Shown here: positions 963 through 54,239 of the stretch, in pieces
How positions within the stretch are numbered: the first letter of the stretch is position 1
Layout: the number at the start of each line of letters is the position of its first letter
DNA from: Dendrobates tinctorius
Lineage: Eukaryota
Direction of reading: 5' to 3'
Length of the DNA stretch: 64,000 bases
Assembly: GCF_039654945.1 (NCBI RefSeq)
Contig: NW_027361671.1
Span: 49,538,001-49,602,000 of the forward strand
Program-made: the position numbers and the translations under genes
Notes under the pieces: model-generated
What the model was told of the DNA's origin: nothing
Seen by the model: only the letters and a program-made list of their open reading frames with translations
Database searches by the model: none

Positions 963-1292
963 GTTGCTATGACAGTCAAATGTCCAGCCAATCAGATGTC
1001 AGCATATAGTGGAAGATACAATATTTTCCATTATAGGGGGAGGGTATTATTATATAGATGTTTTATTATGCATTATTTTGATGAAGAAACATGTGAAAGT
1101 CAATAAATTCCTCCTAACATAATGCAATATATCATTATTAGTAATGATTGTATCCAAAAATAGTATTCGAAGACAGGTGCTCTTTAAATAATATGTGAAT
1201 ACGACCCTACAGCAAGTAGTTCTGCCCAGTGAGCGACGCATCACTAACTGCCGTATTATGTCATCATCCAAACATTCTAACTCTATGGCAAC
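963..1292 (+). promoter_or_regulatory. Candidate promoter motifs upstream of gene copy 1 (RFX X-box-like sites, CCAAT)
   Basis: GTTGCTATGACAG 963-975, CCAAT 988-992, CTATGGCAAC 1283-1292; retained in the other copies. Confidence 0.3.
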
Positions 1293-1383
1293 GAAACCGA
1301 CCGCTAGTAACAGTTTTAGTGACAGTGAAAAAGCGACACTACATATTCACTTTCTGTGAAAACCGAAATCGCTATCAGCTATA

Positions 1384-4300
1384 ATGACTGAAAGAAGGTC
1401 TGCTAGGACAAATAAAGGGGCCCGATACAAGAAATATGTATCCAACGGCCTGCTCGACATTTTATGCAAAAAGGAAAAACCTCGTAAGTGTAAAATGGAG
1501 ACATTAAAATTATTTTACAGTAAAATTCATTTAACGGGAATCTGGTCATTAGATAAATGCTTCCCGAGCTGTAGGCAGCATGAATCAGAGCTTGGCGGCA
1601 CCGCTGCAGCCAGATAGGTTTTTCCTGAAATGCTCCGGCAGATTTTCCCTGCACCACTCCTGTTGACTGAAAGGTCTCAAGTGTGTTAGCGAGTGATCTG
1701 TCAGTGACCTGGAGCGAGGACGTGAGAAGCCGGGAAGGTCACCGGAGGGCGACAGGGAAACGGACGGCTCTTTATATATACCATGTGATTTCAAACTCCA
1801 AACTGTTTTTAGAAAAAATCATACCTGGTTGCAGTCCGGCTCAGATTCATGCTACACGTGTTTGGGCACAGAGAATTAAGTGACAGGTTCCCTTTAATAT
1901 GGCATAAGAGCAGCCAGACAAGTGCCGGATTAACAGTTATTTGCTAACATCAATATACCTAGTAAAATAGATATTTTTTAGAAAAATGGAACAGCACATC
2001 ATTTAGTTAGGTTGAGAAAGGCTCATGTGAGGCGAAACGTCTCCAAGCCACGTGGGCCAAATAAAGTCCACTACATGTTTTTGGTAATGATGGAGCGCTG
2101 CTTCATTTTTTTTTTTACTTCTAGTAAAACAGATAGAAATTACTGATAAAGGGAGAAAACCTTCTGGAAGAAAGTCCAAGTTAAAATATATACCCCAAAT
2201 CAGCTGCTATCATTTCCTAAGCAGAAGGTTCTCCTAATATTCCATTTTCTCCACTTTTAGCTGTTCGGCGCATTAAACCAACAAATAGAAATGAGAGAAG
2301 AACCTTAAAATATTTCCTGGAACAGGCAGCAGTACTGCCTGAGATTGGAGAGCCGGGTACAGAAATAGAATGCACACTGTACTCCATGTAAGTCACCATT
2401 TGTATAATGCTACACCTGCTGTTACAGAGGGTTCATTACCTTATAAGTCCATGTATCAAGGAGAGATGGGGTTTTGTCTTTTAGGGAAGGTGCCATCAAA
2501 AAAAAAAATTTTCTCAACAACTAAAAAAATTTGAAGTCTTAATGTTTTCATTTAAAAAAAATATCAGTTGTTTTTAATCAAATATGAAAAATAATTTAAA
2601 AAGGGTCACACATTTCACTACTGCTCCCATGGAAGTGGACGGCGTGAGGTAACATATTACACCACTGCTCCCATAGAAGTGAAAGGAGTGGGGTCATGCA
2701 TTAGATCACTGTTCCCATAGATGTGGACAGAACGGAGATGCACATTACACCACTGCTCCCATAGAAGTCGACAGAGCGTAAATCACTCCACCGATATAAT
2801 TGGAAGGAGGGGATCACGCATTACACCACTGCTCCCTTAGAAATGTGTAACCATGGTCTGTCCACTTCTATGGGAGCAGTGCTGTAATAGAATAGATAAC
2901 TAAAATAAACGTCCTGTAAATATATAATTTAACAAGCCCTCTACATATAACAAACTTGCACCTTTTAGTGCCTTTCATGGAGCACTTAAAATGACATGGC
3001 GCCCCCTCACCCTTTTTACTGTAACCAGCAAGGGTAAAGCAGAGAGCCGGGGGCTTAGATTATCAGACTGGGAAGGTCCCTGGTTATTGGGCCCTTCCTA
3101 GCCTAAAAATACAAGCCCCAGAATTGGTGCATCACATTAGATGTGCCAATTCTGAAGCTTTGCCTAGCTCTTCCAAAAAACCCATGCAAGTCCTATTTCG
3201 TCCACAAAGGGAAACCTAGAAAAAATAAACAAGAGAAATAAAGACAAGACATTCTCCCTCATTCACCAATTTATTAGAAAATAAAAAGTTCCCATGCAGG
3301 TCCACCGTAATCCATGACTCTCCCACGACTATCCCAGATTCTGACGTCTAAAGGCTATGGAGCCTCATTCAGAGAATAAAGATTCATAGGCTGTAGCAGC
3401 AGCCTCTCTGGGACCCGCTGAAATCATTGAGAAGCGGCGGCTGTGATGAGCAGTGACGTCAGTAACTACACCACTCATGAGAGTGGCTGATCCTCTGTAT
3501 AATGGTCCCATATAGTGCTCCACAGTATAAAGACCTCATATAGTGCACCACAGTATAATTGCGGCTCTACATAGTGCCCTACAGTATACTGGCCCCATAC
3601 AGTGCAATACAGTATACTAGCCCCGTATAGTGCGCTATAGAATAAAGGCCTCATAAAGTGCCCTACAGTATCATGGCCCCATACAGGACCCTACAGTATC
3701 ATGGCCCCATATAGTACCCTACAGTATCATGGCCCCATATCGTGCCCTACAGTATCATGGCCCCATATAGTACCCTACAGTATCATGGCCCCATACAACG
3801 TTCCACAGTATAATGGCTCCTTATAGTGCCCTACAATATAATGGCCCCATATAGTGCCTGACAGTATAATGGCCCTATATGGTGCCCTACGGTATAGTGG
3901 ACCCATATATTACCCTACAATACAATAGCTGCATATAGCACCCTACAGTAAAATAACTCCATATAGTGCCCTAGAGCATGATGGCCTCATGTAGTGACCT
4001 ACAGTAAAATATCCCCATATAGTGCGCCATACTATAAGGTGCCCCACAGTATAATGGCCCTATAGTGTGTTCTACAGTACAATGGTCTCATATAGTGCTC
4101 CACAGTATAATGTGATTGTCTAATCTAAATAGAGAGGAGATTGAGGCCGAGCTTAAGAAACCAGCAAGAAAATTTAAGGAGCCCAGATCACCCGACCCGT
4201 GAGTAACGTGATGGCACCAGCCATACACTAAAAGTTAAACTTAATATATTATTTTTTGTCTGTTAATCACGTACAATGTCAGGACTTCGTTCTGTTTTTG

Positions 4301-4408
4301 TTGTTTTTTTACAGGCCAGAAAATCAAAACGAGGAGATTGACTCAGGGACAGCAGCTGATACGAGCAGCCAGCCGCCCCCCAAGAAAAAAGCGAAAAAGA
4401 ACCATTAG
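1384..4408 (+). CDS. Spliced 128-aa putative nuclear protein, copy 1; join(1384..1483,2261..2387,4133..4198,4315..4408)
   Basis: ATG with A at -3. Donors CTC|gtaagt, CAT|gtaagt, CCC|gtgagt; acceptors ccacttttag, ctaaatag, ttttttacag. Phases 1/2/2 join to 387 nt: MTERRSARTNKGARYKKYVSNGLLDILCKKEKPPVRRIKPTNRNERRTLKYFLEQAAVLPEIGEPGTEIECTLYSIEEIEAELKKPARKFKEPRSPDPPENQNEEIDSGTAADTSSQPPPKKKAKKNH*. Confidence 0.75.
1980..2115 (+). mobile_element. Short Penelope-like remnant in intron 1 with a degenerate hammerhead-type motif
   Basis: TTGAGAA-A-GGCTC-atgt-GAGGC-GAAACGTC at 2012-2041; weakly inverted flanks; also at ~15785 and ~33575. Confidence 0.4.
3500..4110. repeat. 28-bp minisatellite in intron 2 (ccctacagtatcatggccccatatagta)
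   Basis: Period 28 (3661, 3689); unit number varies between copies (~17500-18230, ~35170-35980). Confidence 0.9.
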
Positions 4409-4691
4409 TGATGAGGTAATATAGAGCGCCGATATCTTAATTTTTGTATGGGTGAGGAGAGAGGAGGATCACTATATATTAGCCCTTTTAGATTGATAAT
4501 TGGGGAATATAGTCTCATAAAAATATTACAAGTATAAACATAAACAGAAAAGGTATTTCACAGAAGACAGATTGGGAATGAGGAAACACAAAATAATGAC
4601 ATGCTACATATTGTAACAAAGACTGACACATCACAGTGGTCAGGAATGGTACAAAGAACCATAATTATATATTTTTCTTTTCTTGTTTTAG

Positions 4692-6925
4692 ATGGGGACT
4701 GCCTCCACCATTCACCTACAACCAACCCCCCAAAATGAGCTCCAACCCTTTACTACCTACCAGCCCCCATCTATGTCGAACTACCATCAACTAACTTCAC
4801 CTACCACTAATTCCTACCTCATGCAAGCAAATATGACCAGCTACCATCATCAACGACTAAGAAGTGCCACGTATTTCCTCAAGATGTGACCACCAGCCAG
4901 CAACATCTTTGGCCGTCCTCCACCCGCCAGCAACATCTGTGGCCGTCCTCCACCCGCCAGCAACATCTGTGGCCGTCCTCCACCCGACAGCAACATCTGT
5001 GGCCGTCCTCCACCCGACAGCAACATCTGTGGCCGTCCTCCACCCGCCAGCAACATCTGTGGCCGCCCTCCACCCGCCAGCAACATCTGTGGCCGCCCTC
5101 CACCCGCCAGCAACATCTGTGGCCGCCCTCCACCCGCCAGCAACATCTTTGGCCGCCCTCCACCCGCCAGCAACATCTGTGGCCGCCCTTCACCCGCCAG
5201 CAACATCTTTGGCCGTCCTCCACCCGCCAGCAACATCTTTGGCCGTCCTCCACCCGCCAGCAACATCTTTGGCCGTCCTCCACCCGCCAGCAGCATCTTT
5301 GGCCGTCCTTCACCCGCCAGCAACATCTTTGGCCGTCCTCCACCCGCCAGCAACATCTTTGGCCGTCCTCCACCCGCCAGCAACATCTTTGGCCGTCCTC
5401 CACCCGCCAGCAACATCTTTGGCCGTCTTCCACCCGCCAGCAACATCTTTGGCCGTCCTCCACCCGCCAGCAACATCTTTGGCCGTCCTCCACCCGCCAG
5501 CAACATCTTTGGCCGTCCTCCACCCGCCAGCAACATCTTTGGCCGTCCTCCACCCGCCAGCAACATCTTTGGCCGTCCTCCACCCGCCAGCAACATCTTT
5601 GGCCGTCCTCCACCCGCCAGCAACATCTTTGGCCGTCCTCCACCCGCCAGCAACATCTTTGGCCGTCCTCCACCCGCCAGCAACATCTTTTGGCCGTCCT
5701 CCACCCGCCAGCAACATCTAGTGCAATCCTCCACCGGTCAGCAACATCTAGGGCCATCCTCCACCCGCCAGTAACATCTAGGGCGATCCTTCACCCGCCA
5801 GCAACATCTAGGGCTATCCTCCACCCGCCAGCAACATCTAGGGCTATCCTCCACCCGCCAGCAACATCTAGGGCTATCCTCCACCAGCCAGCAACATCTA
5901 GGGTTATCCTCCACCCGCCAGCAACATCTAGGGCTATCCTCCACCCGGCAGCAACATCTAGGGCCATCCTCCACACGCCAGCAACATTTAGGGCTATCCT
6001 CCACCCGCCAGCAACATCTAGGGCTATCCTCCACCCGCCAGCAACATCTAGGGCTATCCTGCACCGGCCAGCAACATCAAGGGCTATCCTCCACCTGCAA
6101 GCAACATCTAGGGCTATCCTCCACCCGCCAGCAACATCTAGGGCTATCCTCCACTCGCCAGCAACATCTAGGGCTATCCTCCACCCGCCAGCAACATCTA
6201 AGGCTATCCTCCACCCGCCAGCAACATCTAGGGCTATCCTCCACCCGCCAGCAACATCTAGGGCTATCCTCCACCCGCCAGCAACATCTAGGGATATCCT
6301 CCACCCGCCAGCAACCTCAAGGGCTATCCTCCACCCGAAAGCAACATCTACAGCTATCTTCCACGAGTCAGCAACATCTAGGGATATTCTACACCCGCCA
6401 GCAACATCTAGGGCTATCCTCCACCCGCCAACAACATCTAGGGCTATCCTCCACCAGCCAGCAACATCTAGGGTTATCCTCCACCCGCCAGCAACATCTA
6501 GGGCTATCCTCCACCCGGCAGCAACATATAGGGCCATCCTCCACACGCCAGCAACATCTAGGGCTATCCTGCACCGGCCAGCAACATCAAGGGCTATCCT
6601 CCACCTGCAAGCAACATCTAGGGCTATCCTCCACCCGCCAGCAACATCTAGGGCTATCCTCCACTCGCCAGCAACATCTAGGGATATCCTCCACCCGCCA
6701 GCAACATCTAAGGCTATCCTCCACCCGCCAGCAACATCTAGGGCTATCCTCCACCCGCCAGCAACATCTAGGGCTATCCTCCACCCGCCAGCAACCTCAA
6801 GGGCTATCCTCCACCCGCCATCAACATTTAGGTCTAGCCTTTACCCGCCAGCAACATCTACGGCTATTCTTTACCCGCCAGCAACATCTACGGCTATGTA
6901 TTAAACAATTGAAAAAATGTACTGT
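4692..6925 (+). other. Putative terminal 3'UTR exon of gene copy 1 (equivalents start at 18821 and 36571)
   Basis: Donor GAG|gtaat at 4416, 7 nt after the stop. Strong acceptor ttttcttttcttgttttag before 4692. ATTAAA at 6900-6905 followed by a T/G-rich tract (20158 and 37399 in the other copies). Confidence 0.55.
4891..6895. repeat. 30-bp minisatellite, ~67 units (cacccgccagcaacatctttggccgtcctc / cacccgccagcaacatctagggctatcctc)
   Basis: Exact 30-bp periodicity; one 1-bp insertion at ~5691. Confidence 0.98.
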
Positions 6926-7016: not shown

Positions 7017-9929
7017 TTAGACCACTTACTGCCAGCTGACAGAATAGTACGTCAGCTGGCAGTGTCCCACGCTTTGAGGTGGGCTGCGGTGGTGAGCCCA
7101 ACTCAAAGCCCCAACATGTCAGCTGTTTTCAACAGCTGACATGTGCCCGCAATAGGAGCGAACAGAAACGCGATCCGCCCACGCCTATTAATTAGTTAAA
7201 TGCTGCTGTCAAACTCTGACAGGGGGCATTTAACTGTATTTCCGGACGCTGGTCTGGAAACACACACAGCGACGACCCCTGTCACGTGATCGGCGGGGTC
7301 ATCGCTGCGCTGCCATCACAACCAGAGGTCTCATCGAGACGTCTATGGCTGTTGATGGCAGATTACTATGAGCGCCACTCTGTGGTTGGCACTCATAGCA
7401 AGTCTGTAATTCTGCTGCATAGAGGTGATCTGAGCATCACCTCTACACTCCCTGACAGAAGTTATGTCGCTTATCCATGTTATGTAAATAAAAGCTTATA
7501 ACCGGACGTTAAATTCATCCATTGGTTGTATAAAATATTCTTTTGAAAGCTGAAACCATCTCAAACGTGGTTTAGGTTAAAAAAATAATTTGGCATGAAT
7601 GCAGAAATATTGATCATTTAATGGACACAGAATGGTCAGATTTTGGCAAGACAAAAGTTTTGTCGGCCACAGAAAGTTATGTGATATTCAAACAAATAAT
7701 TAACTTAAAATACAAATATATGTTGCATTACATTGGTGAATGAAGTTGTGGTGCTATTAGAGTCATATGTAATATTTAGTGTGACTTCCATGAGCATGAA
7801 GGGCTGCATCCATGCGATTCAACAATGATTCATACAATTTATTAATGAAGTCATCAGGAATAGCAAAGAATGCAGTCTTTCAAGCCTTTCAGAGTTCATC
7901 TAGATTCTTTGCTTTTGTCTTCCCAGCTTCCTCTTTCATCCTACCCCAAACATGCTCAATGATGTTCATGTCTAGTGACTGGGCTGGCCCGTCATTGAGC
8001 ACCTTGATCTTTTTTGCCTGGATGAACTTTGTTGTAGAGATGGAGCATCATCCTGCTGCAGAATTTGACCCCTTTCATTATTTGGAATATAAGAGGTAGC
8101 TAGTACTTCTTGATATTTTAGGCTACTGAGATTGCCTTTCACCTTGCAAATGTTTCGCACCCCCCAAATAATGAATCTAACCCCAGACTATGATCTTTTC
8201 ACCAACAAATTTAACTGTTTTACTGTTTTCTGGGTGTACTTTGGATCCATATGGACTCCTGTAGGTCTCCTGCAGTAGTTGCGGCAGCTGTGATGTAATT
8301 CTACTGAAGAGTCATCAAAGAATTCCACCTTCTGCCACTTTACCAGCGTCCATCTGTTTACCAGGCTGTGGGACTTTGCAAATGCCCCACAGTTTTTTAT
8401 TTGCCCTTTATTTAGTGCTGGCTTCTGGGGACTGATTCGACCATGGAGACCCTTTTGAGACAGAATCCTACAAACTGCTCTAGTTGACTCAGGGACTTGA
8501 CGTGACCAGGCCTGTTGGAGCTCTGCTGCAGTGGAAGAGGGGCTTGCTTTGGATTTCCTAAACAAGCAGCGTTCCTCTTGAGCAGCTGTCTTGCGGGGTC
8601 TGCCGAACCTGGGCTTGTCAAACATCTCCAGTCTCTTCGAATCTTTTTTTAATTCTTTGTACTTGACACTGAGACACATTTAAGGTGCCAGCCACCTCTG
8701 CAGTGGATCTGATCTTCAGCCTCTTGATAATCCAGGCTTTGGTCACAGGCTGGATTTTTGGCATGTTCTCAGAGCTCAAGTTGCAGCTCAAGTGAAGGTC
8801 TGGGGTGCTGGGTTTCTTTTTATACACACCCACTAATTAACAGATCATTTACTAAGCACAGGTGAGGATGTAAACTAGGATTGGGTGTATTGTATGACCA
8901 GGCGACAAAACTTTTGTCTTGCCAAAATCTGACCATTCTGTGTCCATTAAATGATTCTGCATTGATGCCAATTTATTTTCTTAACCGAAACCACATTTCG
9001 GAAGGTTTCAGATTTCAAAAGAATAAATTATATAACCAATGGATGAATTTAACGTCAGGTTATAAGCTTTTATTTACCTAACATGGATAAGCGCCATAAC
9101 TGCTGTCAGGGAGTGTATGTAGCAGAGGCGATCGCGCTATGGCAGCTTCTAACCTCCTATAAACACTATTGAAGCATGCCAAAAGTAAAAAAAAAAAAAA
9201 AAGGTTTAAAAATATAAAAATGAAAAAACAAAACAAATTCAAATGACCCCCCTTTCGCTGCATTCAGAATTGCCCGATCTATCAATAAAAAAAAAAAAAA
9301 AAAAAACCTGATCGCTAAACAGCGTAATGATAAAAAAGCCAGAATTAATAGAATTACTTTTTTTGGTTGCCGCGACATTGCGTTAAATGCGATAACGGGC
9401 AATTAAAAGAACGAATCTGCACAAAAGTGCTATCGTTAAAGACGTCAAATCAGTACGCAAAACATAAACCAACACCCAACCCGAGATAACAAAAATGGAG
9501 ACGCTAAGGGTCTCGGAAAAATGCAAAAAATTTTTTTGGCAAAATTTGGAATTCTTTTTAGAAAAATTTGGAATTTTTTTTCACCACTTAGATAAAAGAG
9601 AACCTACACATGCTTGGTGTCTATGAACTTATAATGACCTGGAAAATCATAATTGCAGGTCAGTTTTAGCATTTAGTGAACCTAGCAAAAAACCCAAACA
9701 ATAAACAAGTGTGGGATTGCACTTTTTTGCAATTTCACTGCACTTGGAATTTTTTTTCCTGTTTTCGAGTACACGACATGGTAAAATCAATGGCTTTGTT
9801 CAAAAGTACAACTCGTCCCGCAAAAAAAAAGCCCTCACACAGTCATATTGACGGAAAAATAAAAAAGTTATGGCTTTGGAAAGTAGGGGAGCGAAAAATA
9901 GAAAAAAGCTCCGGTCATGAAGGAGTTAA
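7017..9929. mobile_element. Non-autonomous TTAA-target (piggyBac-type) MITE interrupted by Tc1; equivalents at ~20265-22912 and ~37511-38855
   Basis: Right end catgaagg(a/g)gTTAA; degenerate left end; shares blocks (gtcagctg..cagctgac hairpin) in reverse orientation with the element from 59332. Confidence 0.7.
7446..9115 (-). mobile_element. Tc1-like transposon with decayed transposase
   Basis: TA|CACTCCCTGACAG...CTGTCAGGGAGTG|TA with long TIRs; minus-strand fragments MPKIQPVTKAWIIKRL, GRPRKT, ILQQDDAP. Confidence 0.93.
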
Positions 9930-10059
9930 ACATGGAAGCAGGTGGCGAAATTTGCCTTGGAAACCTGCCATCTCCCAAATGGGCTTTAGACAGGAGGCAC
10001 TGCAGGCTGTATCCTACATGACTGGCAATAGATATGCAGGACTGCAGGCTGAATGACAC

Positions 10060-13365: not shown

Positions 13366-15148
13366 TATAATGTCCACCACAACCTCACAGCATATTGTCC
13401 ACCACAGACTCCTCACACATGATGATCTCCACAGCCCGCCACACAATATGATGGTTAACGTACAGCCCTCCACACAGTATGATAGTCACCACACACAATA
13501 CGATGGCCCTACAACAGCCCTCTATATAATATGATGGTCCCCCACAGTATAATAGTCCCCCCATATAGTATGATGGTCCCGTACAGCTCTAATTCAGTGT
13601 CATGGTTCCCCACACCCCCCATATAGTATGATGGTCCCCCCACAACCACAATACAATACGATGGTGCCCCAATACAGTACGATGGTCTGGGAGAGACCAT
13701 GCCACAATATATTTTGATGGTCTCCCACAGTCCTAATACAGTATGATGATCACCATAGCCCCCTATATAGTATGACAGTCCTCGCAAAGGCTCCTATATA
13801 GTATGATGGTCCCCCACAGGCACCAATATAGTATGATGGCCCCCCCACAGGCACCAATACAGTACCATGGTTTCCCATAATCCACCACAAAATATGATTG
13901 TCCCCCCACAGACTCATATAGTATGATGGGCTCCCACCAGGCCCCTTTATAGTATGATGGCTTCACACAGTTTTCCATATATTATGATTGCCCCCTATAT
14001 AGTATGATGGTTCGCAAGCAGGCCTTTATCTAATATCATGGTCCTCCACAGCCCCAATACAGTACGATGGTCTGAACACAGGCCCCTATATAGTATGGTA
14101 GTCCCCAGAGCCCCAATACAGGATAGAAGCATACTGCAGCCTGCAAGAGTAAGTGACGGAGTATGGAGCTAGCGGCTCTGTGCTCCGTCACTGATATTAA
14201 CAGTACCAACGTATGGACAACGCCAATATAGTTAACAAAGTCGCAAAAGATGCAGATCGGCACAACTGGCGTTTGCCAGAATTGCCAGATGTAAAAGCAT
14301 CATCGGCCTGGTAGACCTGCATGCTATTTTCCTTCTTTAAATTTAGCACACCGACAGCTTTCAAAACGAGTTGTTCAGTAGTGAATAACCCCTTTAAAAA
14401 CAGACATGCTGTCAACTGGATACAAACATGATGCAAAAAAAGGCCTAATTAACAATACTTCCTATAAATACCTCAAATCAACAAAGAAAAGGGAAGTATA
14501 CACCATTTAATAGAAAAGACAAAAAGTTTATTAAATAGTACTCATTATACAATTAAAATGCAAAAAACAGAGATACAAAATGCAAAGCAGCTCCCAGCAG
14601 CAAGGTATCTTTTCTATTAAATGTTGGATACATACATGATTGTTGGTCTATGGTGGCTGCACACGTGTATTTTTTATGTCAGAGAGCAGAGTAATAACAC
14701 AAACTGAATTAAATAATTGCGCTCCATGTTGCTATGACAGTCAAATGTCCAGCCAATCAGATGTCAGCATATAGTGGAAGATACAATATTTTCCATTATA
14801 GGGGGAGGGTATTATTATATAGATGTTTTATTATGCATTATTTTGATGAAGAAACATGTGAAAGTCAATAAATTCCTCCTAACATAATGCAATATATCAT
14901 TATTAGTAATGATTGTATCCAAAAATAGTATTCGAAGACAGGTGCTCTTTAAATAATATGTGAATACGACCCTACAGCAAGTAGTTCTGCCCAGTGAGCG
15001 ACGCATCACTAACTGCCGTATTATGTCATCATCCAAACATTCTAACTCTATGGCAACGAAACCGACCGCTAGTAACAGTTTTAGTGACAGTGAAAAAGCG
15101 ACACTTCATATTCACTTTCTGTGGAAACCGAAATCGCTATCAGCTATA

Positions 15149-18100
15149 ATGACTGAAAGAAGGTCTGCTAGGACAAATAAAGGGGCCCGATACAAGAAAT
15201 ATGTATCCAACGGCCTGCCCGAGATTTTATGCAAAAAGGAAAAACCTCGTAAGTGTAAAATGGAGACATTAAAATTATTGTACAGTAAAATTCATTTAAC
15301 GGGAACCTGGTCATTAGATAAATGCTTCCCGAGCTGTAGGCAGCATGAATCAGAGCTTGGCGGCACCGCTGCAGCCAGATGGGTTTTTCCTGAAATGCTC
15401 CGGCAGCTTTTCCCTGCACCACTCCGGTTGACTGAAAGGTCTCAAGTGTGTTAGCGAGTGATCCGTCAGTGACCTGGAGCGAGGACGTGAGAAGCCGGGA
15501 AGGTCACCGGAGGGCGACAGGGAAACGGACGGCTCTTTATATATACCATGTGATTTCAAACTCCAAACTGTTTTTAGAAAAAATCATACCTGGTTGCAGT
15601 CGTGCAGTTCGGCTCAGATTCATGCTACACGTGTTTGGGCACAGAGAATTAAGTGACAGGTTCCCTTTAATATGGCATAAGAGCAGCCAGACAAGTGCCG
15701 GATTAACAGTTATTTGATAACATCAATATACCTTGTAAAATAGATATTTCTTAGAAAAATGGAACAGCACATCATTTAGTTAGGTTGAGAAAGGCTCATG
15801 TGAGGCGAAACGTCTCCAAGCCATGTGGGCCAAATAAAGTCCACTACATCTTTTTGGTAATGATGGAGCGCTGCTTTTTTTTTTTTTACTTCTAGTAAAA
15901 CAGATAGAAATTTCTGATAAAGGGAGAAAACCTTCTGGAAGAAAGTCCAAGTTAAAATATATACCCCAAATCAGCTGCTATCATTTCCTAAGCAGAAGGT
16001 TCTCCTAATATTCCATTTTCTCCACTTTTAGCTGTTCGGCGCATTAAACCAACAAATAGAAAGGAGAGAAAAACCTTAAAATATTTCCTGGAACAGGCAG
16101 CAATCCTCCCTGAGATTGGAGAGCCGGGTACAGAAATAGAAAGCACACTGTACTCCATGTAAGTCACCATTTGTATAATGCTACACCTGCTGTTACAGAG
16201 GGTTCATTACCTTATAAGTCCATGTATCAAGGATAGATGGGGTTTTGTCTTTTAGGGAAGGTGCCATCAAAAAAAAAATTTTCTCCACAACTAGAAAAAT
16301 TTGAAGTCTTAATGTTTTCATTTAAAAAAAATATCAGTTTTTAATAAAATATGAAAAATAATTTAAAAAGGGTCACACATTTCACTACTGCTCCCATGGA
16401 AGTGGACGGCGTGAGGTTACATATTATACCACTGCTCCCATAGAAGTGAATGGAGCGGGGTCATGCATTAGATCACTGTTCCCATAGATGTGGACAGAAC
16501 GGGGATACACATTACACCACTGCTCCCATAGAAGTCGACAGAGCGTAAATCACTCCACTGACATAATTGGAAGGAGGGGCTCACGCATTACACCACTGCT
16601 CCCTTAGAAATGTGTAACCCTGGTCTGTCCACTTCTATGGGAGCAGTGCTGTAATAGAATAGGTAACTAAAATAAACGTCCTGTAAATATATAATTTAAC
16701 AAGCCCTCTACATATAACAAACTTTCACCTTTTAGTGCCTTTCATGGAGCACTTAAAATGACGTGGCACCCCCTCACCCTTTTTTCTGTAACCAGCAAGG
16801 GTAAAGCAGACAGCTGGGGGCTTAGATTATCAGACTGGGAAGGTTCCTGGTTATTGGGCCCTTCCTAGCCTAAAAATACAAGCCCCAGAATTGGTGCATC
16901 ACATTAGATGTGCCAATTCTGAAGCTTTGCCTAGCTCTTCCAAATTGATCTGGTGTGGTGGCAATTGGGGTAATGGTAGTTGGGGGTTGATAACAGCTGT
17001 GAATTGTCAAAAATCACATCTGGCATCAAGTCCTGTGGTTAGTAATGGAAAGGTGACTATCAGACACTGCTCATATTAACACACTAATTAATGAGAGAGA
17101 AAAAACAAACAAACATTTTTTTCTTTATTTGAATAAAGACTCCCTCGACTCTTTTACGTTTTCCATATTTATTTTTGAAAAGAAAAACCTATGCAAGTGC
17201 TATTTCGTCCACAAAGGGAAACCTAGAAAAAATAAAAAAGAGAAATAAAGACAAGACATTCTCCCTCGTTCACCAATTTATTAGAAAATAAAAAGTTCTC
17301 ATGCAGGTCCACCGTAATCCATGACTTTCCCACGACTATCCCAGATTCTAAAGTCTAAAGGTTATGGAGCCTCGTTCAGAGAATAAAGATTCATAGGCTG
17401 TAGCAGCAGCAGCCTCTCTGGGACCTGCTGAACTCCTTGAGAAGCGGCGGCTGTGATGAGCAGTGACGTCAGTAACTACATCACTCATGAGAGTGGCTGA
17501 TCCTCTGTATAATGGTCCCATATAGTGCTCCACAGTATAAAGACCTCATATAGTGCACCACAGTATAATTGCGGCTCTACATAGTGCCCTACAGTATACT
17601 GGCCCCATACAGTGCAATACAATATACTAGCCCCGTATAGTGCTCTATAGAATAAAGGCCTCATAAAGTGCCCTACAGTATCATGGCCCCATACAGTACC
17701 CTACAGTATCATGACCCCATATAGTACCCTACAGTATCATGGCCCCATATAGTACCCTACAGTATCATGGCCCCATATCGTGCCCTACAGTATCATGGCC
17801 CCATATAGTACCCTACAGTATCATGGCCCCATATCATGCCCTACAGTATCATGGCCCCATATAGTACCCTACAGTATCATGGCCCCATAAAGTACCCTAC
17901 AGTATCATGGCCCCATACAACGCTCCACAGTATAATGGCTCCTTATAGTGCCCTACAATATAATGGCCCCATACAGTGCCTGACAGTATAATGGCCCTAT
18001 ATGGTGCCCTACGGTATAGTGGACCCATATAGTAACCTACAATAAAATAGCTCCATATAGCACCCTACAGTAAAATAACTCCATATAATGCCCTAGAGCA

Positions 18101-18531
18101 TGATGGCCTCATGTAGTGACCTACAGTAAAATATCCCCATATAGTTCCCCATACTATAAGGTGCCCCACAGCATAATGGCCCTATAGTGTGTTCTACAGT
18201 ACAATGGTCTCATATAGTGCTGCACATTATCATGTGATTGTCTAATCTAAATAGAGAGGAGATTGAGGCCGAGCTTAAGAAACCAGCAAGAAAATTTAAG
18301 GAGCCCAGATCACCCGACCCGTGAGTAACGTGATGGCACCAGCCATACACTAAAAGTTAAGCTTAATATATTATTTCTTGTCTGTTAATCACGTACAATG
18401 TCAGGATTTCGTTCTGTTTTTGTTCTTTTTTTTACAGGCCAGAAAATCAAAACGAGGAGATTGATTCAGGGACAGCAGCTGATACGAGCAGCCAGCCGCC
18501 CCCCAAGAAAAAAGCGAAAAAGAACCATTAG
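15149..18531 (+). CDS. Spliced 128-aa putative nuclear protein, copy 2; join(15149..15248,16032..16158,18255..18320,18438..18531)
   Basis: Same exon lengths (100/127/66/94) and splice sites, no indel or premature stop. Differs from copy 1 by L24P, D25E, N44K, R47K, V58I, C71S. Confidence 0.75.
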
Positions 18532-19019
18532 TGATGAGGTAATATAGAGCGCCGATATCTTAATTTTTGTATGGGTGAGGAGAGAGGAGGATCACTGTAT
18601 ATTAGCCCTTTTAGATTGATAATTGGGGAATATAGTCTCATAAAAATATTACAAGTATAAACAAACATGAACAGAAAAGGTATTTCACAGAAGACAGATT
18701 AGGAATGAGGAAACACATAAAATAATGACATGCTACATATTGTAACAAAGACTGACACATCACAGTGGTCAGGAATGGTACAAAGAACCATAATTATATA
18801 TTTTTCTTTTCTTGTTTTAGATGGTGACTGCCTCCACCAGTCACCTACAACCAACCCCCCAAAATGAGCTCCAACCCTTTACTACCTACCAGCCCCCATC
18901 TATGTCGAACTACCATCAACTAACATCACCTACCACTAATTCCTACCTCATGCAAGCAAATATGACCAGCTACCATCATCAACGACTACGAAATGCCACC
19001 TATTTCCTCAAGATGTGAC

Positions 19020-20153
19020 CACCCGCCAGCAACATCTTTGGCCATCTTAAACCCGCCAGCAACATCTTTGGCCATCCTCCACCCGACAGCAACATCTAGG
19101 GCCATCCTCCACCCGCCAGCAACATCTTTGGCCATCCTCCACCCGCCAGAAACATCTAGGGCCATCCTCCACCCACCAGCAACATCTAGGGCCGTCCTTC
19201 ACCCGCCAGCAACATCTTTGGCCGTCCTCCACCCGCCAGCAACATCTGTGGCCGTCCTCCACACGCCAGCAACATCTGTGGCCGTCCTCCACACGCCAGC
19301 AACATCTGTGGCCGTCCTCCACACGCCAGCAACATCTGTGGCCGTCCTCCACACGCCAGCAACATCTGTGGCCGTCCTCCACACGCCAGCAACATCTGTG
19401 GCCGTCCTCCACCCGCCAGCAACATCTGTGGCCGTCCTCCACCCGCCAGCAACATCTGTGGCCGTCCTCCACCCGCCAGCAACATCTTTGGCCGCCCTCC
19501 AACCGCCAGCAACATCTTTGGCCGTCCTCCAACCGCCAGCAACATCTTTGGCCGTCCTCCACCCGCCAGCAACATCTTTGGCCGTCCTCCACCCGCCAGC
19601 AACATCTTTAGCCGTCCTCCACCCGCCAGCAACATCTTTGGCCGTCCTCCACCAGCCAGTAACATCTTTGGCCGTCCTCCACCCGCCAGCAACATCTAGG
19701 GCAATCCTCCACCCGCCAGCAACATCTAGGTCCATCCTCCACCCGCCAGCAACATCTTTAGCCGTCCTCCACCCGCCAGCAACATCTTTGGCCGTCCTCC
19801 ACCAGCCAGTAACATCTTTGGCCGTCCTCGACCCGCCAGCAACATCTACGGCTATCCTCCACCCGCCAGCAACATCTAGGGATATCGTCCACCCGAAAGC
19901 AACATCTAGGGCTATACTCCACCCGAAAGCAACATCTACAGCTATCTTCCACGAGCCAGCAACATCTAGGGCTATCCTCCACCCGCCAGCAACCTCTAGG
20001 GCTATGCTCCACCAGCCAGCAACATCTAGGGCTATCCTCCACCCGCCAGCAACATCTAGGGCTATCCTTTACCCGCCAGCAACATCTACGGCTATCCTTT
20101 ACCCGCCAGCAACATCTACGGCTATCCTTTACCCGCCAGCAACATCTACGGCT
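19020..20153. repeat. 30-bp minisatellite, ~38 units
   Basis: Same unit as 4891-6895. Confidence 0.98.
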
Positions 20154-20693
20154 ATGTATTAAACAATTGAAAAAATGTACTGTATTATAGTTTTAGTTTA
20201 AAAAAAAATTTATACCAGGAAAGCAAAAAACATGATAATTTTAAAAGGTTTGCTATTTTCCACTTTAGACCACTTACTGCCAGCCGACAGAATAGTACGT
20301 CAGCTGGCAGTATCCCACGCTTTGAGGTGGGCTGCGGTGGTGAGCCCAACTCAAAGCCCCAACATGTCAGCTGTTTTCAACAGCTGACATGTGCCCGCAA
20401 TAGGCGCGAACAGAAACGCGATCCGCCCACGCCTATTAATTAGTTAAATGCTGCTGTCAAACTCTGATAGGGGGCATTTAAATGCATTTCCAGACGCTGG
20501 TCCGGAAACACACACAGCGACGACCCCTGTCACGTGATCGGCGGGGTCATCGCTGCGTTGCCATCACAACCAGAGGTCTCATCGAGACGTCTATGGTTGT
20601 TGATGGCAGATTACTATGAACGCCACTCTGTGGTTGGCACACATAGCAAGCCTGTAATTCTGCTGCATAGAGGTGATCTGAGCATCACCTCTA

Positions 20694-27336: not shown

Positions 27337-27500
27337 GCACTTTATGTATCTCTCTGTACCTCTATTCTTTCTTAAATTATTAACTGTTCTAACCCAGCCT
27401 CCATGCCACCCCCACCCCCATTGTCATTATTTGTGCCCAGGTCTCTATCTGCACTGTCTTCCCCTCCTATAAAAGGAATACCCTCCCCCCCATCCCTAGT

Positions 27501-28206
27501 TTAAACACTCCTCCAACCTTCTAGCCATTTTCTCCCCCAGCACAGCTGCACCCTCCCCATTGAGGTGCAGCCCGTCCCTAGCGTAGAACCTGTAGCCAAC
27601 TCAGAAGTCGGCCCAGTTCTGCAGGAACCCAAACCCCTCCTTCCTACACCAATTCCTGAGCCACTTATTAACCTCCCTAATCTCCCGTTGCCTCTCTGGT
27701 GTGGCAAGTGGTACAGGAAGTATTTCCGAAAATACCACCTTGGAGGTCCTTGCTTTAAGCTTACAGCGTAATTCCCTGAAATCATCTTTAAGGACCTTCC
27801 ACCTACCTCTAACTTTGTCATTTGTGCCAATGTGCACCATGACCGCTGGATCCTCACCAGCCCCTCCCAGTAATCGGTCAACCCGATCAGCGATGTGTTG
27901 GACTCGAGCTCCAGGTAGGCAGCACACCGTTCGACGATCCCTATCTTTGTGACAGATTGCCCTATCTGTTCCCCTAATAATTGAGTCTCCCACTACCAGA
28001 ATCTGTCTGGCCTGCCCTGCTCTCCTATTTCCCCCCTTACTGGAGCAGACACGCCTCCGGCTTTCAGAGGACATGCCTTGCTGCAGCAGTGCTACTCCTG
28101 CACTAACACTCCCCTCATCTGTCAACTTAGCAAACTTATTGGGGTGTGCCAGATCAGGACTAGCCTCCCTGGTGCTCTTCCCTCTACCCCGCCTTCTAAC
28201 TGTCAC
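27501..28206 (-). pseudogene. CR1 ORF1 SGNH/GDSL esterase-like domain, truncated and interrupted
   Basis: VVGDSIIR, CLPGA, VHIGTND motifs. Confidence 0.88.
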
Positions 28207-32938: not shown

Positions 32939-35900
32939 ATGACTGAAAGAAGGTCTGCTAGGACAAATAAAGGGGCCCGATACAAGAAATTTGTATCCAA
33001 CGGCCTGCTCGAGATTTTATGCAAAAAGGAAAAACCTCGTAAGTGTAAAATGGAGACATTAAAATTATTGTACAGTAAAATTCATTTAACGGGAACCTGG
33101 TCATTAGATAAATGCTTCCCGAGCTGTAGGCAGCATGAATCAGAGCTTGGCGGCACCGCTGCAGCCAGATAGGTTTTTCCTGAAATGCTCCGGCAGCTTT
33201 TCCCTGCACCACTCCGGTTGACTGAAAGGTCTCAAGTGTGTTAGCGAGTGATCTGTCAGTGACCTGGAGCGAGGACGTGAGAAGCCGGGAAGGTCACCGG
33301 AGGGCGACAGGGAAACGGACGGCTCTTTATATATACCATGTGATTTCAAACTCCAAACTGTTTTTAGAAAAAATCATACCTGGTTGAAGTCGTGCAGTCC
33401 GGCTCAGATTCATGCTACACGTGTTTGGGCACAGAGAATTAAGTGACAGGTTCCCTTTAATATGGCGTAAGAGCAGCCAGACAAGTGCCGGATTAACAGT
33501 TATTTGATAACATCAATATACCTTGTAAAATAGATATTTTTTAGAAAAATGGAACAGCACATCATTTAGTTAGGTTGAGAAAGGCTCATGTGAGGCGAAA
33601 CGTCTCCAAGCCATGTGGGCCAAATAAAGTCCACTACATGTTTTTGGTAATGATGGAGCGCTGCTTCATTTTTTTTTTACTTCTAGTAAAACAGATAGAA
33701 ATTACTGTTAAGGGGAGAAAACCTTCTGGAAGAAAGTCCAAGTTAAAATATAAACCCCAAATCAGCTGCTATCATTTCCTAAGCAGAAGGTTCTCCTAAT
33801 ATTCCTTTTTCTCCACTTTTAGCTGTTCGGCGCATTAAACCAACAAATAGAAAGGAGAGAAAAACCTTAAAATATTTCCTGGAACAGGCAGCAATCCTCC
33901 CTGAGATTGGAGAGCCGGGTACAGAAATAGAAAGCACACTGTACTCCATGTAAGTCACCATTTGTATAATGCTACACCTGCTGTTACAGAGGGTTCATTA
34001 CCTTATAAGTCCATGTATCAAGGATAGATGGGGTCTTGTAGTTTTAGGGAAGGTGTCATCAAATAAAAATTTTTCTCAACAACTAAAAAAATTTGAAGTC
34101 TTAATGTTTTAATTTTAAAAAAATATCAGTTGTTTTTAATAAAATATGAAAAATAATTTAAAAAGGGTCACACATTTCACTACTGCTCCCATGGAAGTCG
34201 ACAGAGCGTAAATCACTCCACCGATATAATTGGAAGGAGGGGATCACGCATTACACCACTGCTCCCTTAGAAATGTGTAACCCTGGTCTGTCCACTTCTA
34301 TGGGAGCAGTGCTGTAATAGAATAGGTAACTAAAATAAAGGTCCTGTAAATATATAATTTAACAAGCCCTCTACATATAACAAACTTGCACCTTTTAGTG
34401 CCTTTCATGGAGCACTTAAAATGACGTGGCGTCCCCTCACCCTTTTTTCTGTAACCAGCAAGGGTAAAGCAGACAGCTGGGGGCTTAGATTATCAGACTG
34501 GGAAGGTCCCTAGTTATTGGGCCCTTCCTAGCCTAAAAGTACAAGCCCCAGAATTGGTGCATCACATTAGATGTGCCAATTCTGAAGCTTTGCCTAGCTC
34601 TTCCAAATTGATCTGGTGTGGTGGCAATTGGGGTAATGGTAGTTGGGGGTTGATAACAGCTGTGAATTGTCAAAAATCACATCTGGCATCAAGTCCTGTG
34701 GTTAGTAATGGAAAGGTGACTATCAGACACTGCTCATTATTAACACACTAATTAATGAAAGAGAAAAAACAAACAAACATTTTTTTCTTTATTTGAATAA
34801 AGACTCCCTCGACTCTTTTCCGGTTTCCATATTTATTTTTGAAAAGAAAAACCCATGCAAGTCCTATTTCGTCCACAAAGGGAAACCTAGAAAAAATAAA
34901 CAAGAGAAATAAAGACAAGACATTCTCCCTCGTTCACCAATTTATTAGAAAATAAAAAGTTCTCATGCAGGTCCACCGTAATCCATGACTTTCCCACGAC
35001 TATCCCAGATTCTAAAGTCTAAAGGTTATGGAGCCTCGTTCAGAGAATAAAGATTCATAGGCTGTAGCAGCAGCCTCTCTGGGACCCGCTGAACTCCTTG
35101 AGAAGCGGCGGCTGTGATGAGCAGTGACGTCAGTAACTACACCACTTATGAGAGTGGCTGATCCTCTGTATAATGGTCCCATATAGTGCTCCACAGTATA
35201 AAGACCTCATATAGTGCACCACAGTATAATTGCGGCTCTATATAGTGCCCTACAGTATACTGGCCCCATACAGTGCAATACAGTATACTAGCCCCGTATA
35301 GTGCGCTATAGAATAAAGGCCTCATAAAGTGCCCTACAGTATCATGGCCCCATAGAGTACCCTACAGTATCATGGCCCCATATAGTACCCTACAGTATCA
35401 TGGCCCCATATAGTACCCTACAGTATCATGGCCCCATATAGTACCCTACAGTATCATGGCCCCATATCGTGCCCTACAGTATCATGGCCCCATATAGTAC
35501 CCTACAGTATCATGGCCCCATATCGTGTCCTACAGTATCATGGCCGCATATCATGCCCTACAGTATCATGGCCCCATATCATGCCCTACAGTATCATAGC
35601 CCCATATAGTACCCTACAGTATCATGGCCCCATAAAGTACCCTACAGTATCATGGCCCCATACAACGCTCCACAGTATAATGGCTCCTTATAGTGCCCTA
35701 CAATATAAAGGCCCCATATAGTGCCTGACAGTATAATGGCCCTATATGGTGCCCTACAGTATAGTGGACCCATATAGTAACCTACAATACAATAGCTCCA
35801 TATAGCACCCTACAGTAAAATGACTCCATATAGTGCCCTACAGCATGATGGCCTCATGTAGTGACCTACAGTAAAATATCCCCATAAAGTTCCCCATTCT

Positions 35901-36279
35901 ATAAGGTGCCCCACAGTATAATGGCCCTATAGTGTGTTCTACAGTACAATGGTCTCATATAGTGCGCCACAGTATAATGTGATTGTCTAATCTAAATAGA
36001 GAGGAGATTGAGGCCGAGCTTAAGAAACCAGCAAGAAAATTTAAGGAGCCCAGATCACCCGACCCGTGAGTAACGTGATGGCACCAGCCATACACTAAAA
36101 GTTAAACTTAATATATTATTTCTTGTCTGTTAATCACGTACAATGTCAGGATTTCGTTCTGTTTTTTTTTTCTTTTGTTTTACAGGCCAGAAAATCAAAA
36201 CGAGGAGATTGACTCAGGGACAGCAGCTGATACGAGCAGCCAGCCGCCCCCCAAGAAAAAAGCGAAAAAGAACCATTAG
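32939..36279 (+). CDS. Spliced 128-aa putative nuclear protein, copy 3; join(32939..33038,33823..33949,36000..36065,36186..36279)
   Basis: Same exon lengths and splice sites, intact. Differs from copy 1 by Y18F, D25E, N44K, R47K, V58I, C71S. Confidence 0.75.
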
Positions 36280-36770
36280 TGATGAGGTGATATAGAGCGT
36301 CGATATCTTAATTTTTGTATGGGTGAGGAGAGATAAGGATCACTATATATTAGCCCTTTTAGAATGATAATTGGGGAATATAGTCTCATAAAAATATTAC
36401 AAGTATAAACATAAACATGAACAGAAAAGGTATTTCACAGAAGACAGATTGGGAATGAGGAAACACATAAAATAATGACATGCTACATATTGAAACAAAG
36501 ACTGACACATCACAGTGGTCAGGAATGGTACAAAGAACCATAATTATATATTTTTCTTTTCTTGTTTTAGATGGTGACTGCCTCCACCAGTCACCTACAA
36601 CCAACCCCCCCAAAATGAGCTCCAACCCTTTACTACCTACCAGCCCCCATCTATGTCGAACTACCATCAACTAACATCACCTACCACTAATTCCTACCTC
36701 ATGCAAGCAAATATGACCAGCTACCATCATCAACTACTACGAAATGCCACCTATTTCCTCAAGATGTGAC

Positions 36771-45509: not shown

Positions 45510-47104
<1,595 letters not shown>

Positions 47105-54235: not shown

Positions 54236-54239
54236 CTGT

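What the first reader, a model, noticed from the sequence alone, without database searches (positions are those of the whole stretch)
1384..2387. Protein appears to carry BBX/Capicua-type motifs without an HMG box
Seen: exon 1 encodes RRSARTNKGARYKKYVSNGLL and exon 2 encodes FLEQAAVLPEI. Recalled, not searched: vertebrate BBX contains RKSERSCKGALYKTLVSEGML followed by FEKKFNSLP and then a basic NLS, and CIC contains FEERFAELPEF. The shared patterns R.S.R..KGA.YK..VS.G.L and F......LP occur here in the same order as in BBX. Inference: an HMG-less microprotein, derived from or converging on BBX, that might compete for its cofactors. RRSAR also resembles the HMGN nucleosome-binding core RRSARLSA.
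Basis: partly seen in the sequence, partly recalled or inferred. Interest (0 to 1): 0.78.

Follow-up and report, generated by a model that had tools for sequence, protein, structure and literature searches.

The report
Frog-only small nuclear protein family
This is a real poison-frog gene, present three times in a row, for a small floppy protein whose best-conserved feature is an RRSAR "arginine anchor" like the one HMGN proteins use to grip nucleosomes; the proposed kinship with BBX/Capicua could not be confirmed.

Summary
Exon 1 (1384-1483) and exon 2 (2261-2387) encode the quoted peptides. They belong to a 4-exon, 128-aa gene with GT/AG introns. The gene occurs as three intact tandem copies, with starts at 1384, 15149 and 32939.

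A public paralogue has the same layout: Ranitomeya variabilis LOC143793800, 128 aa. dN/dS against it is about 0.3.

A profile search of 1.84 billion proteins found relatives only in three hyloid frogs (Ranitomeya, Anomaloglossus, Rhinoderma). It found no BBX, CIC or HMGN. Pfam, PDB, the ESM Atlas and viral contigs gave nothing.

AlphaFold predicts disorder with three short helices.

Across 11 family members the only invariant residues are M1, R4, R5, R8 and K11. That is the RR[S/T]xR pentamer, which is the nucleosome acidic-patch contact of HMGN2, Dsup and yeast Dot5 in the literature.

- Motif 1 (12 of 21 identities) is suggestive, with about 0.06 chance matches expected per proteome.
- Motif 2 is at chance level.

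Best reading: a frog-restricted, tandemly amplified family of disordered nuclear proteins that probably dock on the nucleosome acidic patch. This is inferred, not shown. Descent from BBX is unsupported.

The parts
1384..1483 (+). Copy 1, exon 1: start codon and residues 1-33, plus the first base of codon 34 (phase 1).
   Evidence: ATG with A at -3. GTAAGT donor at 1484. Matches exon 1 of the annotated paralogue P0001.
1393..1407 (+). Codons 4-8, RRSAR: an HMGN-like arginine-anchor pentamer.
   Evidence: R4, R5 and R8 are invariant, and S6 is nearly so, in 11 family members. The pentamer is identical to HMGN2 residues 22-26, which contact the acidic patch, and to the start of the Dot5 motif at residues 6-13.
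2261..2387 (+). Copy 1, exon 2: residues 34-76.
   Evidence: TTTTAG acceptor and GTAAGT donor. tblastn finds it in all three copies and as an unannotated exon in Rhinoderma locus L002.
2302..2361 (+). Second conserved block, residues 48-67 (TLKYFLEQAAVLPEIGEPGT): a predicted short helix followed by an LPEIG turn.
   Evidence: A57, P60, I62, G63 and T67 are nearly invariant. AlphaFold helix at 49-58, with block-mean pLDDT of about 67-72 for residues 41-60.
4133..4198 (+). Copy 1, exon 3: residues 77-98, an acidic helix (EEIEAELK) and a basic stretch.
   Evidence: AG acceptor and GTGAGT donor. AlphaFold helix at 76-83.
4315..4408 (+). Copy 1, exon 4: residues 98-128 and the stop codon (4406-4408).
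   Evidence: Pyrimidine tract followed by a CAG acceptor. The frame closes with TAG. Same layout as P0001.
4373..4399 (+). C-terminal PPPKKKAKK: a likely classical nuclear localisation signal.
   Evidence: S116, K122 and K125 are nearly invariant, and the KPPPKKR.KK block is kept across paralogues. The function is inferred from resemblance to monopartite signals.
4692..4738 (+). Probable relic of a former fifth coding exon, now in the 3' untranslated region (inference).
   Evidence: A GAG|GTAATA donor lies directly after the stop, and a TTTTAG acceptor lies at 4691. In the frame of the long paralogues the exon reads ...SPTTNPPK-stop, like their C-terminal ends. The window frame differs by a few inserted bases that create the early stop.
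1195..1383 (+). Conserved proximal promoter or 5' untranslated region.
   Evidence: It aligns across all nine loci compared. These include paralogues with only 40-55% protein identity, and Rhinoderma. No reading frame is kept, because the indels are not multiples of three. No conserved RNA fold and no Rfam hit.
15149..18531 (+). Copy 2 of the gene: exons 15149-15248, 16032-16158, 18255-18320 and 18438-18531.
   Evidence: Intact 128-aa frame, GT/AG at all introns, six residue differences from copy 1.
32939..36279 (+). Copy 3 of the gene: exons 32939-33038, 33823-33949, 36000-36065 and 36186-36279.
   Evidence: Intact 128-aa frame, GT/AG at all introns. The surrounding segments are 92-97% identical to those of the other copies.

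Best explanation
The window carries three tandem, intact copies of a gene from a family found so far only in hyloid frogs (poison frogs, Anomaloglossus, Rhinoderma). Each copy encodes a 128-residue protein that is mostly disordered.

The protein has four conserved elements:
- an N-terminal basic motif (M-T-E-RRSAR-x-NKG-x-RY);
- a short conserved helix followed by an LPEIG turn;
- an acidic stretch;
- a C-terminal lysine-rich nuclear localisation signal.

Proposed mechanism, which is inferred and not shown: the protein enters the nucleus by the C-terminal signal. It then docks on the acidic patch of the H2A-H2B surface of nucleosomes. R5 and R8 of the RR[S/T]xR pentamer act as arginine anchors, as in HMGN2, tardigrade Dsup and yeast Dot5. 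Once there it either competes with other acidic-patch binders or brings a partner bound to the middle helix.

It is not a detectable relative of BBX, CIC or HMGN. The likeness is at the level of a short linear motif.
For: The gene is real.
- It has four exons with canonical splice sites in three copies.
- A public gene model has the same layout.
- dN/dS is about 0.3 at dS of about 0.15.
- Its exons and promoter are alignable in Rhinoderma and Anomaloglossus, while its introns are not.

The family is restricted to frogs. The only true hits among 1.84 billion proteins are frog proteins.

The protein is disordered. pLDDT is 63 and pTM 0.18 for the 128-aa form, and 60 and 0.21 for a 172-aa paralogue. 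Both show only short helices.

The motif is conserved. M1, R4, R5, R8 and K11 are the only invariant columns among 11 members that otherwise share 40-56% identity with the first. S6 is nearly invariant.

The literature supports the motif's role.
- In cryo-EM, HMGN2 residues 22-26 (RRSAR) are the resolved contact. R23 and R26 sit at the two ends of the acidic patch.
- Dsup uses RRSSR in the same way (PMC12487698).
- Yeast Dot5 has the motif at residues 6-13, also N-terminal. It needs R6, R7 and R10 for nucleosome binding (bioRxiv 10.64898/2026.01.14.699602).

The C-terminal KPPPKKR.KK block is conserved.
Against: No binding data exist, and no complex could be modelled here.

The pentamer is short. 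About 240 RR[ST]xR strings are expected by chance in a 10-million-residue proteome, so its presence alone proves nothing.

The second half of the HMGN, Dsup and Dot5 octamers is hydrophobic then small then small (LSA, LTS, IAT). Here it is replaced by x-N/K-K. The family's conserved stretch also runs on as NKGxRY, which those proteins lack.

The same residues could instead serve as a kinase site, as part of an import signal, or as a nucleic-acid-binding patch.

No RNA evidence for expression was obtained. Every sequencing run that held the stretch looked like genomic DNA.
Confidence: 0.4

Rival explanations
1. The family is real and nuclear, but the N-terminal basic motif has another job. It could be a phospho-regulated site (RRS is a basophilic-kinase target), part of a bipartite import signal with the C-terminal lysines, or a DNA/RNA-binding patch. 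In this reading the protein acts through the conserved middle helix on an unknown partner.
For: The conserved N-terminal stretch extends beyond the HMGN-type pentamer (NKGxRY). It lacks the hydrophobic-small-small tail of the HMGN, Dsup and Dot5 motifs. The middle block LEQAA.LPEIGDP.T is almost as conserved as the N-terminus. The pentamer is common by chance.
Against: The exact spacing of the three arginines with Ser/Thr at position 3 is what stays invariant, while neighbouring basic residues vary. That is the pattern the acidic-patch contact needs. In HMGN the serine is itself a phospho-switch for the same contact, so a kinase site and an anchor do not exclude each other.
Confidence: 0.3
2. 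The family shares a short linear motif with vertebrate BBX, either by capture of BBX sequence or by convergence. As a protein without an HMG box it competes with BBX for whatever binds that motif.
For: If the recalled BBX peptide is right, it shares 12 of 21 residues with residues 4-24 (BLOSUM62 score 56). About 0.06 such matches are expected per proteome, after allowing for all windows of the query. The identities fall on the conserved family positions R4, S6, R8, K11, A13, Y15, K16 and V19. The recalled BBX string also fits R-[RK]-S-x-R, so both proteins could share one target.
Against: The BBX and CIC peptides are recollections that no tool here could check.

No BBX or CIC protein reached E <= 1e-3 in the exhaustive profile search. 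Pfam gave no hit.

The second motif is at chance level.

The VS.G.L half of motif 1 is missing from several family members (P0004, P0005, P0006, P0014).

Nothing outside the 21-mer is alike. Here the motif sits at the very start of a gene with its own conserved promoter.

The post-hoc choice of boundaries makes 0.06 an optimistic figure.
Confidence: 0.15
3. The reading frames are not functional genes. They would be recently duplicated non-coding or pseudogenic sequence picked up by gene predictors.
For: No transcript evidence was obtained here. The family has no known domain. The region is rich in repeats and transposons.
Against: All three copies and the paralogue keep the full frame and every splice site. 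Nonsynonymous changes are about three-fold under-represented. The exons and the proximal promoter are the only parts still alignable with Rhinoderma and Anomaloglossus loci. Independent annotations in three species call family members.
Confidence: 0.05

Closest known systems
HMGN proteins (HMGN1-5), nucleosome-binding core RRSARLSA
   Same: Small, disordered and nuclear, with basic and acidic stretches. Residues 4-8 of the window protein (RRSAR) are identical to the part of HMGN2 seen on the acidic patch.
   Different: No HMG14_17 Pfam match. The tail LSA is replaced by T-N-K. The motif sits at the extreme N-terminus. The exon layout and the rest of the sequence are unrelated. The family is known from three frog families rather than from all vertebrates.
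Tardigrade Dsup and yeast Dot5: unrelated proteins with an HMGN-like motif
   Same: They are precedents for lineage-restricted or unrelated proteins that use RRSxR to bind the acidic patch. The Dot5 motif is also N-terminal (residues 6-13) and depends on the same three arginines.
   Different: No sequence relation beyond the pentamer. Both keep a hydrophobic residue after the last arginine (L or I), which most frog members lack. Binding has been shown for them and not for this family.
   Same: A 21-residue stretch with 12 identities, in a basic context, followed at some distance by a lysine-rich import signal (finding text).
   Different: No HMG box. No significant profile match. The second motif is at chance level. 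The BBX sequence was not verified with any tool.
Arginine-anchor peptides of CENP-C (RRSxR...YW) and herpesvirus LANA (N-terminal LRSGRS), named from established knowledge
   Same: Short basic motifs in disordered regions. LANA's is at the extreme N-terminus, and CENP-C's is followed by aromatic residues, as Y15 follows here.
   Different: The spacing to the aromatic residue differs by one position, and there is no tryptophan. No sequence relation. These comparisons rest on memory and were not tested here.

Membership tests
BBX / HMG-box proteins | HMG-box DNA-binding domain | tested here: not met
   No HMG_box or other Pfam family hit at E <= 10 on the exon pieces or on the full-length paralogue P0001. 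The precomputed Pfam column is empty for all family members.
BBX / HMG-box proteins | Significant sequence or profile similarity to BBX outside the HMG box | tested here: not met
   A profile search of 1.84 billion proteins gave frog family members and one spurious repeat protein only. The recalled BBX 21-mer scores 9.7 bits against the N-terminal profile.
BBX / HMG-box proteins | Shared short motif R.S.R..KGA.YK..VS.G.L | tested here: inconclusive
   12 of 21 identities with the recalled peptide, and about 0.06 chance matches per proteome before post-hoc correction. The peptide could not be verified. Half of the motif is absent from several family members.
   No Pfam hit and no CIC in the profile search. 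The recalled CIC 11-mer scores 3.9 bits, and about 170 equally good matches are expected per proteome.
HMGN family | Full nucleosome-binding domain (Pfam HMG14_17) with the core RRSARLSA | tested here: not met
   The first five residues are identical in the window copies. The last three are T-N-K instead of L-S-A. No HMG14_17 match.
HMGN family | Orthologues throughout vertebrates | tested here: not met
   Relatives were found only in Ranitomeya, Anomaloglossus and Rhinoderma.
Proteins with an HMGN-like acidic-patch motif (a functional class: HMGN, Dsup, Dot5) | Three arginines at positions 1, 2 and 5, with Ser/Thr at position 3, in a disordered region | tested here: met
   RRSAR, RRSTR or RRTAR in all 11 members. 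The arginines are invariant. The region is predicted to be disordered.
Proteins with an HMGN-like acidic-patch motif (a functional class: HMGN, Dsup, Dot5) | Hydrophobic residue right after the last arginine (L, L, I in HMGN, Dsup, Dot5) | tested here: not met
   Position 9 is T, A, P or K in most members, and I only in the two Anomaloglossus isoforms P0015 and P0016. The motifs are quoted.
Proteins with an HMGN-like acidic-patch motif (a functional class: HMGN, Dsup, Dot5) | Arginine-dependent binding to the nucleosome acidic patch | not testable with these tools
   This needs binding assays. [quoted passage not shown]

The most novel reading that the evidence does not exclude
The family is a frog invention of 'acidic-patch adaptors'.
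- The longer paralogues (P0002, P0003, P0004, P0014, P0015) carry, besides the RR[S/T]xR anchor, a helix that reads like a Sin3-interaction domain (A-A-x-x-L, ...AAVALMSLS..W). They could tether Sin3/HDAC straight to nucleosomes without any DNA-binding domain.
- The short version, amplified in tandem in this window, has lost that helix. It would then act as a natural patch blocker or dominant negative.
- The conserved promoter has CRE-like sites and an RFX half-site-like element. That hints at expression in spermatids, where chromatin is stripped and repacked.
Probability: 0.08. Interest if true: 0.7.

Novelty: new member of a known kind. Interest (0 to 1): 0.33.

Why it matters
If the anchor works as proposed, this would be another independent appearance of the HMGN-type nucleosome-binding motif, after HMGN, Dsup and Dot5. 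It would sit in a young, lineage-restricted and actively duplicating gene family. [quoted passage not shown] The family would then give a natural set of variants for studying competition at the acidic patch: forms with and without an extra helix, and forms with different residues after the anchor.

If the anchor does not work as proposed, this is an ordinary orphan gene family of a large, repeat-rich frog genome. For the scan, the main lesson is that the BBX/Capicua reading rests on recalled peptides and does not survive a database test.

Tried and rejected
- **Pfam.** Scans of the four exon pieces and of the full-length paralogue gave only sub-threshold FBD and TilS_C noise.
- **ESM Atlas.** Feature searches with the whole P0001, the whole P0003, and residues 1-33 of P0001 gave no usable hit.
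- **PDB sequence search.** The family profile and residues 1-33 gave nothing meaningful.
- **Viral contigs.** Six pattern matches, none a relative.
- **Chironomus F-box protein P0007.** It reached E = 4e-8 in the big search only by adding up six copies of a weak match. One repeat unit has an hhalign probability of 0.25%. Rejected.
- **RNA evidence.** No listed run is on record as RNA. Three runs were only guessed to be RNA, and they held next to none of the stretch. The runs that did hold it looked like genomic DNA, with contigs running through the introns and no splice joints at the exon borders. Expression and splicing therefore rest on the public gene models and on conservation.
- **Getting a real BBX or CIC sequence.** The word search cannot return proteins of that length for so short a query, the exhaustive search did not list them, and paper full texts do not hold the peptides.
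- **My first Karlin-Altschul estimate for the 21-mer.** It gave about 0.5-4 chance matches per proteome. It was wrong for so short a query and was replaced by an exact convolution.
- **Upstream reading frame.** The frame 1229-1384, which ends in TAATG on the start codon, was rejected as coding. Indels among the paralogues are not multiples of three.
- **Conserved RNA structure in the 190 bases upstream.** Consensus energy was only -9.4 kcal/mol, and the covariation term was unfavourable. No Rfam family was found anywhere in the window.
- **ASF1-binding (RRI.P), WDR5 WIN (SART) and HP1 (PxVxL) motif ideas.** Dropped, because the residues vary among the paralogues.
- **Fold searches.** Not run, because both models are low-confidence and disordered.
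- **Assembly gap 41958-42138.** Left alone.
Full report
**What is in the window**

- An ATG at 1384, with A at -3, opens exon 1 (1384-1483). The exon encodes 33 residues that start M-T-E-RRSAR and ends at a GTAAGT donor.
- Exon 2 (2261-2387) follows a TTTTAG acceptor. It encodes the FLEQAAVLPEI stretch and also ends at GTAAGT.
- Two more exons, 4133-4198 and 4315-4408, close the frame at a TAG. The product is 128 residues.

My first guess for the start of exon 4 was one base off and gave a wrong frame. This was corrected.

**Copies**

The gene is present three times on the + strand, with starts at 1384, 15149 and 32939. All three frames and all splice sites are intact. The copies sit in segmental duplications that are 92-97% identical. 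The proteins of copies 2 and 3 each differ from copy 1 at six residues.

**Public counterpart and species**

The word search found one close protein, P0001. It is 'uncharacterized protein LOC143793800' of the poison frog Ranitomeya variabilis and is also 128 aa.

Its locus, L001, has the same four exons. Its DNA is only about 86% identical to the window, so it is a paralogous copy and not this stretch. It lies inside, and antisense to, a FERM-domain gene.

**Is it coding?**

Against L001 the three copies show 11-12 synonymous and 12-14 nonsynonymous differences. That gives dS of about 0.15 and dN/dS of 0.28-0.33.

In comparisons with loci from Rhinoderma (L002) and Anomaloglossus (L003), only the exons and the proximal upstream region still align.

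Sequencing runs gave no transcript evidence. The runs that held the stretch looked like genomic DNA.

**Relatives**

A profile of four Ranitomeya paralogues was scanned against 1.84 billion representative proteins. It gave six hits at E <= 1e-3.
- Five are frog proteins from Ranitomeya variabilis, Anomaloglossus baeobatrachus and Rhinoderma darwinii. All are annotated as uncharacterised.
- The sixth is a Chironomus F-box protein made of six identical repeats. It is spurious, because one unit gives an hhalign probability of 0.25%.

A second word search with the wider alignment added three more frog members.

No BBX, CIC, HMGN or any named family appeared. Pfam, the Atlas, the PDB and viral contigs were blank.

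The annotated Rhinoderma protein P0008 shares only exon 1. However, its locus holds unannotated exon-2-like and exon-4-like sequences, so the canonical gene exists there too.

**Anatomy of the protein**

AlphaFold with the family alignment gives mean pLDDT 63 and pTM 0.18, with helices at 23-29, 49-58 and 76-83. A 172-aa paralogue gives 60 and 0.21. The proteins are disordered and carry short helices.

Across 11 members that share 40-56% identity with the first:
- the only invariant columns are M1, R4, R5, R8 and K11;
- S6, R37, A57, P60, I62, G63, T67, S116, K122 and K125 are nearly invariant.

So the conserved elements are RR[S/T]xR-x-x-K at the N-terminus, A.LPEIG..T in the middle, and a lysine block at the C-terminus.

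**The BBX/Capicua claim**

I could not obtain a BBX or CIC sequence with the tools. The quoted peptides occur in no searchable paper. They remain recollections, and I used only the short strings given in the finding.

Scores against the family profiles:
- BBX motif 1: 9.7 bits
- BBX motif 2: -2.2 bits
- CIC motif: 3.9 bits

Direct comparison of motif 1 gives 12 of 21 identities and a BLOSUM62 score of 56. No 21-mer in 60 million random residues reached that score. The exact probability is 5.9e-11 per position. That is 6e-4 per proteome for this 21-mer, about 0.06 after allowing for all windows of the query, and about 14 in the whole library for the one 21-mer.

Motif 1 is therefore suggestive, but it is not significant once the post-hoc choice of boundaries is allowed for. 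Motif 2 is plain chance, at about 62,000 (BBX) and about 170 (CIC) expected matches per proteome.

The VS.G.L half of motif 1 is missing from P0004, P0005, P0006 and P0014.

Descent from BBX is unsupported. A shared short motif cannot be excluded.

**The HMGN-like anchor**

- Cryo-EM of HMGN2 on nucleosomes resolves residues 22-26, RRSAR. R23 and R26 sit at the two ends of the acidic patch, and S24 acts as a phospho-switch.
- Tardigrade Dsup uses RRSSR in the same way (PMC12487698).
- Yeast Dot5 carries RRSARIAT at residues 6-13 and needs R6, R7 and R10 for nucleosome binding (bioRxiv 10.64898/2026.01.14.699602).

The frog family keeps these three arginines and the Ser/Thr, at residues 4-8, in a disordered N-terminus.

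It does not keep the hydrophobic-small-small tail of those motifs. It is also not an HMGN by Pfam or by distribution. The pentamer alone is expected about 240 times per proteome by chance. The argument therefore rests on its invariance, not on its presence.

I take acidic-patch docking as the most likely mechanism, at about 0.4. All of it is inference.

**Other features of the family**

The roughly 190 bases upstream of the ATG are alignable in all nine loci compared, including paralogues with under 50% protein identity. They include these blocks:
- AGTAGTTCTG;
- CRE-like sites, with a perfect TGACGTCA in L004 and L005;
- CTCTATGGCAAC, which resembles an RFX half-site (from memory);
- CCGCCAGTAAC.

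Further upstream are a CCAAT box and a TATAAAT-like box.

There is no conserved frame, no conserved RNA fold and no Rfam hit. The regulation of the family seems more constrained than its protein sequence.

The long paralogues carry an extra helix...AAVALMSLS..W. [quoted passage not shown] The window's subfamily lacks this helix.

The window genes also end early. A donor follows the stop codon directly, and a downstream exon-like piece (4692-4738) reads like the C-terminal end of the long paralogues.

**Verdict**

The sequence observation is right. The BBX/Capicua interpretation is not supported by any database test, and its second motif is chance.

What is there is a frog-restricted, tandemly amplified family of small disordered proteins, probably nuclear. 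Its one invariant element is an HMGN-type arginine anchor. This is a new member of a known kind of motif-bearing protein. It is of modest interest until binding is tested.

Noticed in passing
window 1195-1383 (also 14960-15148 and 32750-32938); L001-L006 about 9800-10000: About 190 bases upstream of the start codon are conserved across all nine family loci. In distant paralogues they are better conserved than the coding sequence. The blocks are AGTAGTTCTG, CRE-like sites (perfect TGACGTCA in L004 and L005), CTCTATGGCAAC (RFX half-site-like) and CCGCCAGTAAC. A CCAAT box lies near -390 and a TATAAAT-like box near -200. No frame, RNA fold or Rfam family explains the conservation.
   Followed up: partly
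window 4890-6897, 19019-20155, 36770-37396: A C-rich 30-base minisatellite (about 67 copies in the first array, 93% matches) follows each gene copy. It yields long artefactual reading frames on both strands. In Rhinoderma the annotated 241-aa protein P0008 seems to read into a similar repeat instead of the canonical exons.
   Followed up: partly
window 3497-4025 (intron 2 of copy 1) and 104-355: A 28-base satellite (about 19 copies) lies inside intron 2. A related 91-base-period repeat lies at the start of the window. The same satellite fills the corresponding intron of the paralogous locus L001.
   Followed up: no
window 4406-4413 and 4692-4738: The stop codon of the window genes sits 5 bases (4409-4413) before a good splice donor. 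A downstream exon-like piece reads like the C-terminal end of the longer paralogues in their frame. A few inserted bases seem to have created the early stop, turning a former last coding exon into 3' untranslated sequence.
   Followed up: partly
paralogues P0002, P0003, P0004, P0014, P0015 (not in the window): The long family members carry an extra predicted helix (...AAVALMSLS..W, residues about 101-126 of P0003). [quoted passage not shown] The window subfamily has lost it.
   Followed up: partly
L002 10613-10705 and 11206-11292 (Rhinoderma darwinii): Unannotated exon-2-like and exon-4-like sequences of the family lie inside the gene annotated as P0008. The public model there is probably mis-spliced or an alternative form.
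   Followed up: partly
L001 (Ranitomeya variabilis CM120274.1, about 164.73 Mb); L005: The paralogue P0001 lies inside, and antisense to, a FERM-domain gene (FERM_N, FERM_M, FERM_C, FA). The paralogue P0002 lies inside the range of a gene with a DDE_Tnp_4 (Harbinger-type) transposase domain.
   Followed up: no
window 24759-28206 (-), 46075-46899 (+), 8188-8679 (-), 57850-58851 (+), 50399-51166 and 53471-54237: Transposon remains fill the space between the gene copies:
- a CR1/L2-type element with an esterase-like ORF1, an endonuclease and a reverse transcriptase;
- two Tc1/mariner transposase fragments;
- a second endonuclease ORF;
- a pair of 99%-identical 770-base direct repeats about 3 kb apart, which look like long terminal repeats.
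   Followed up: partly
window 41958-42138: A run of 181 N (assembly gap or mask).
   Followed up: no
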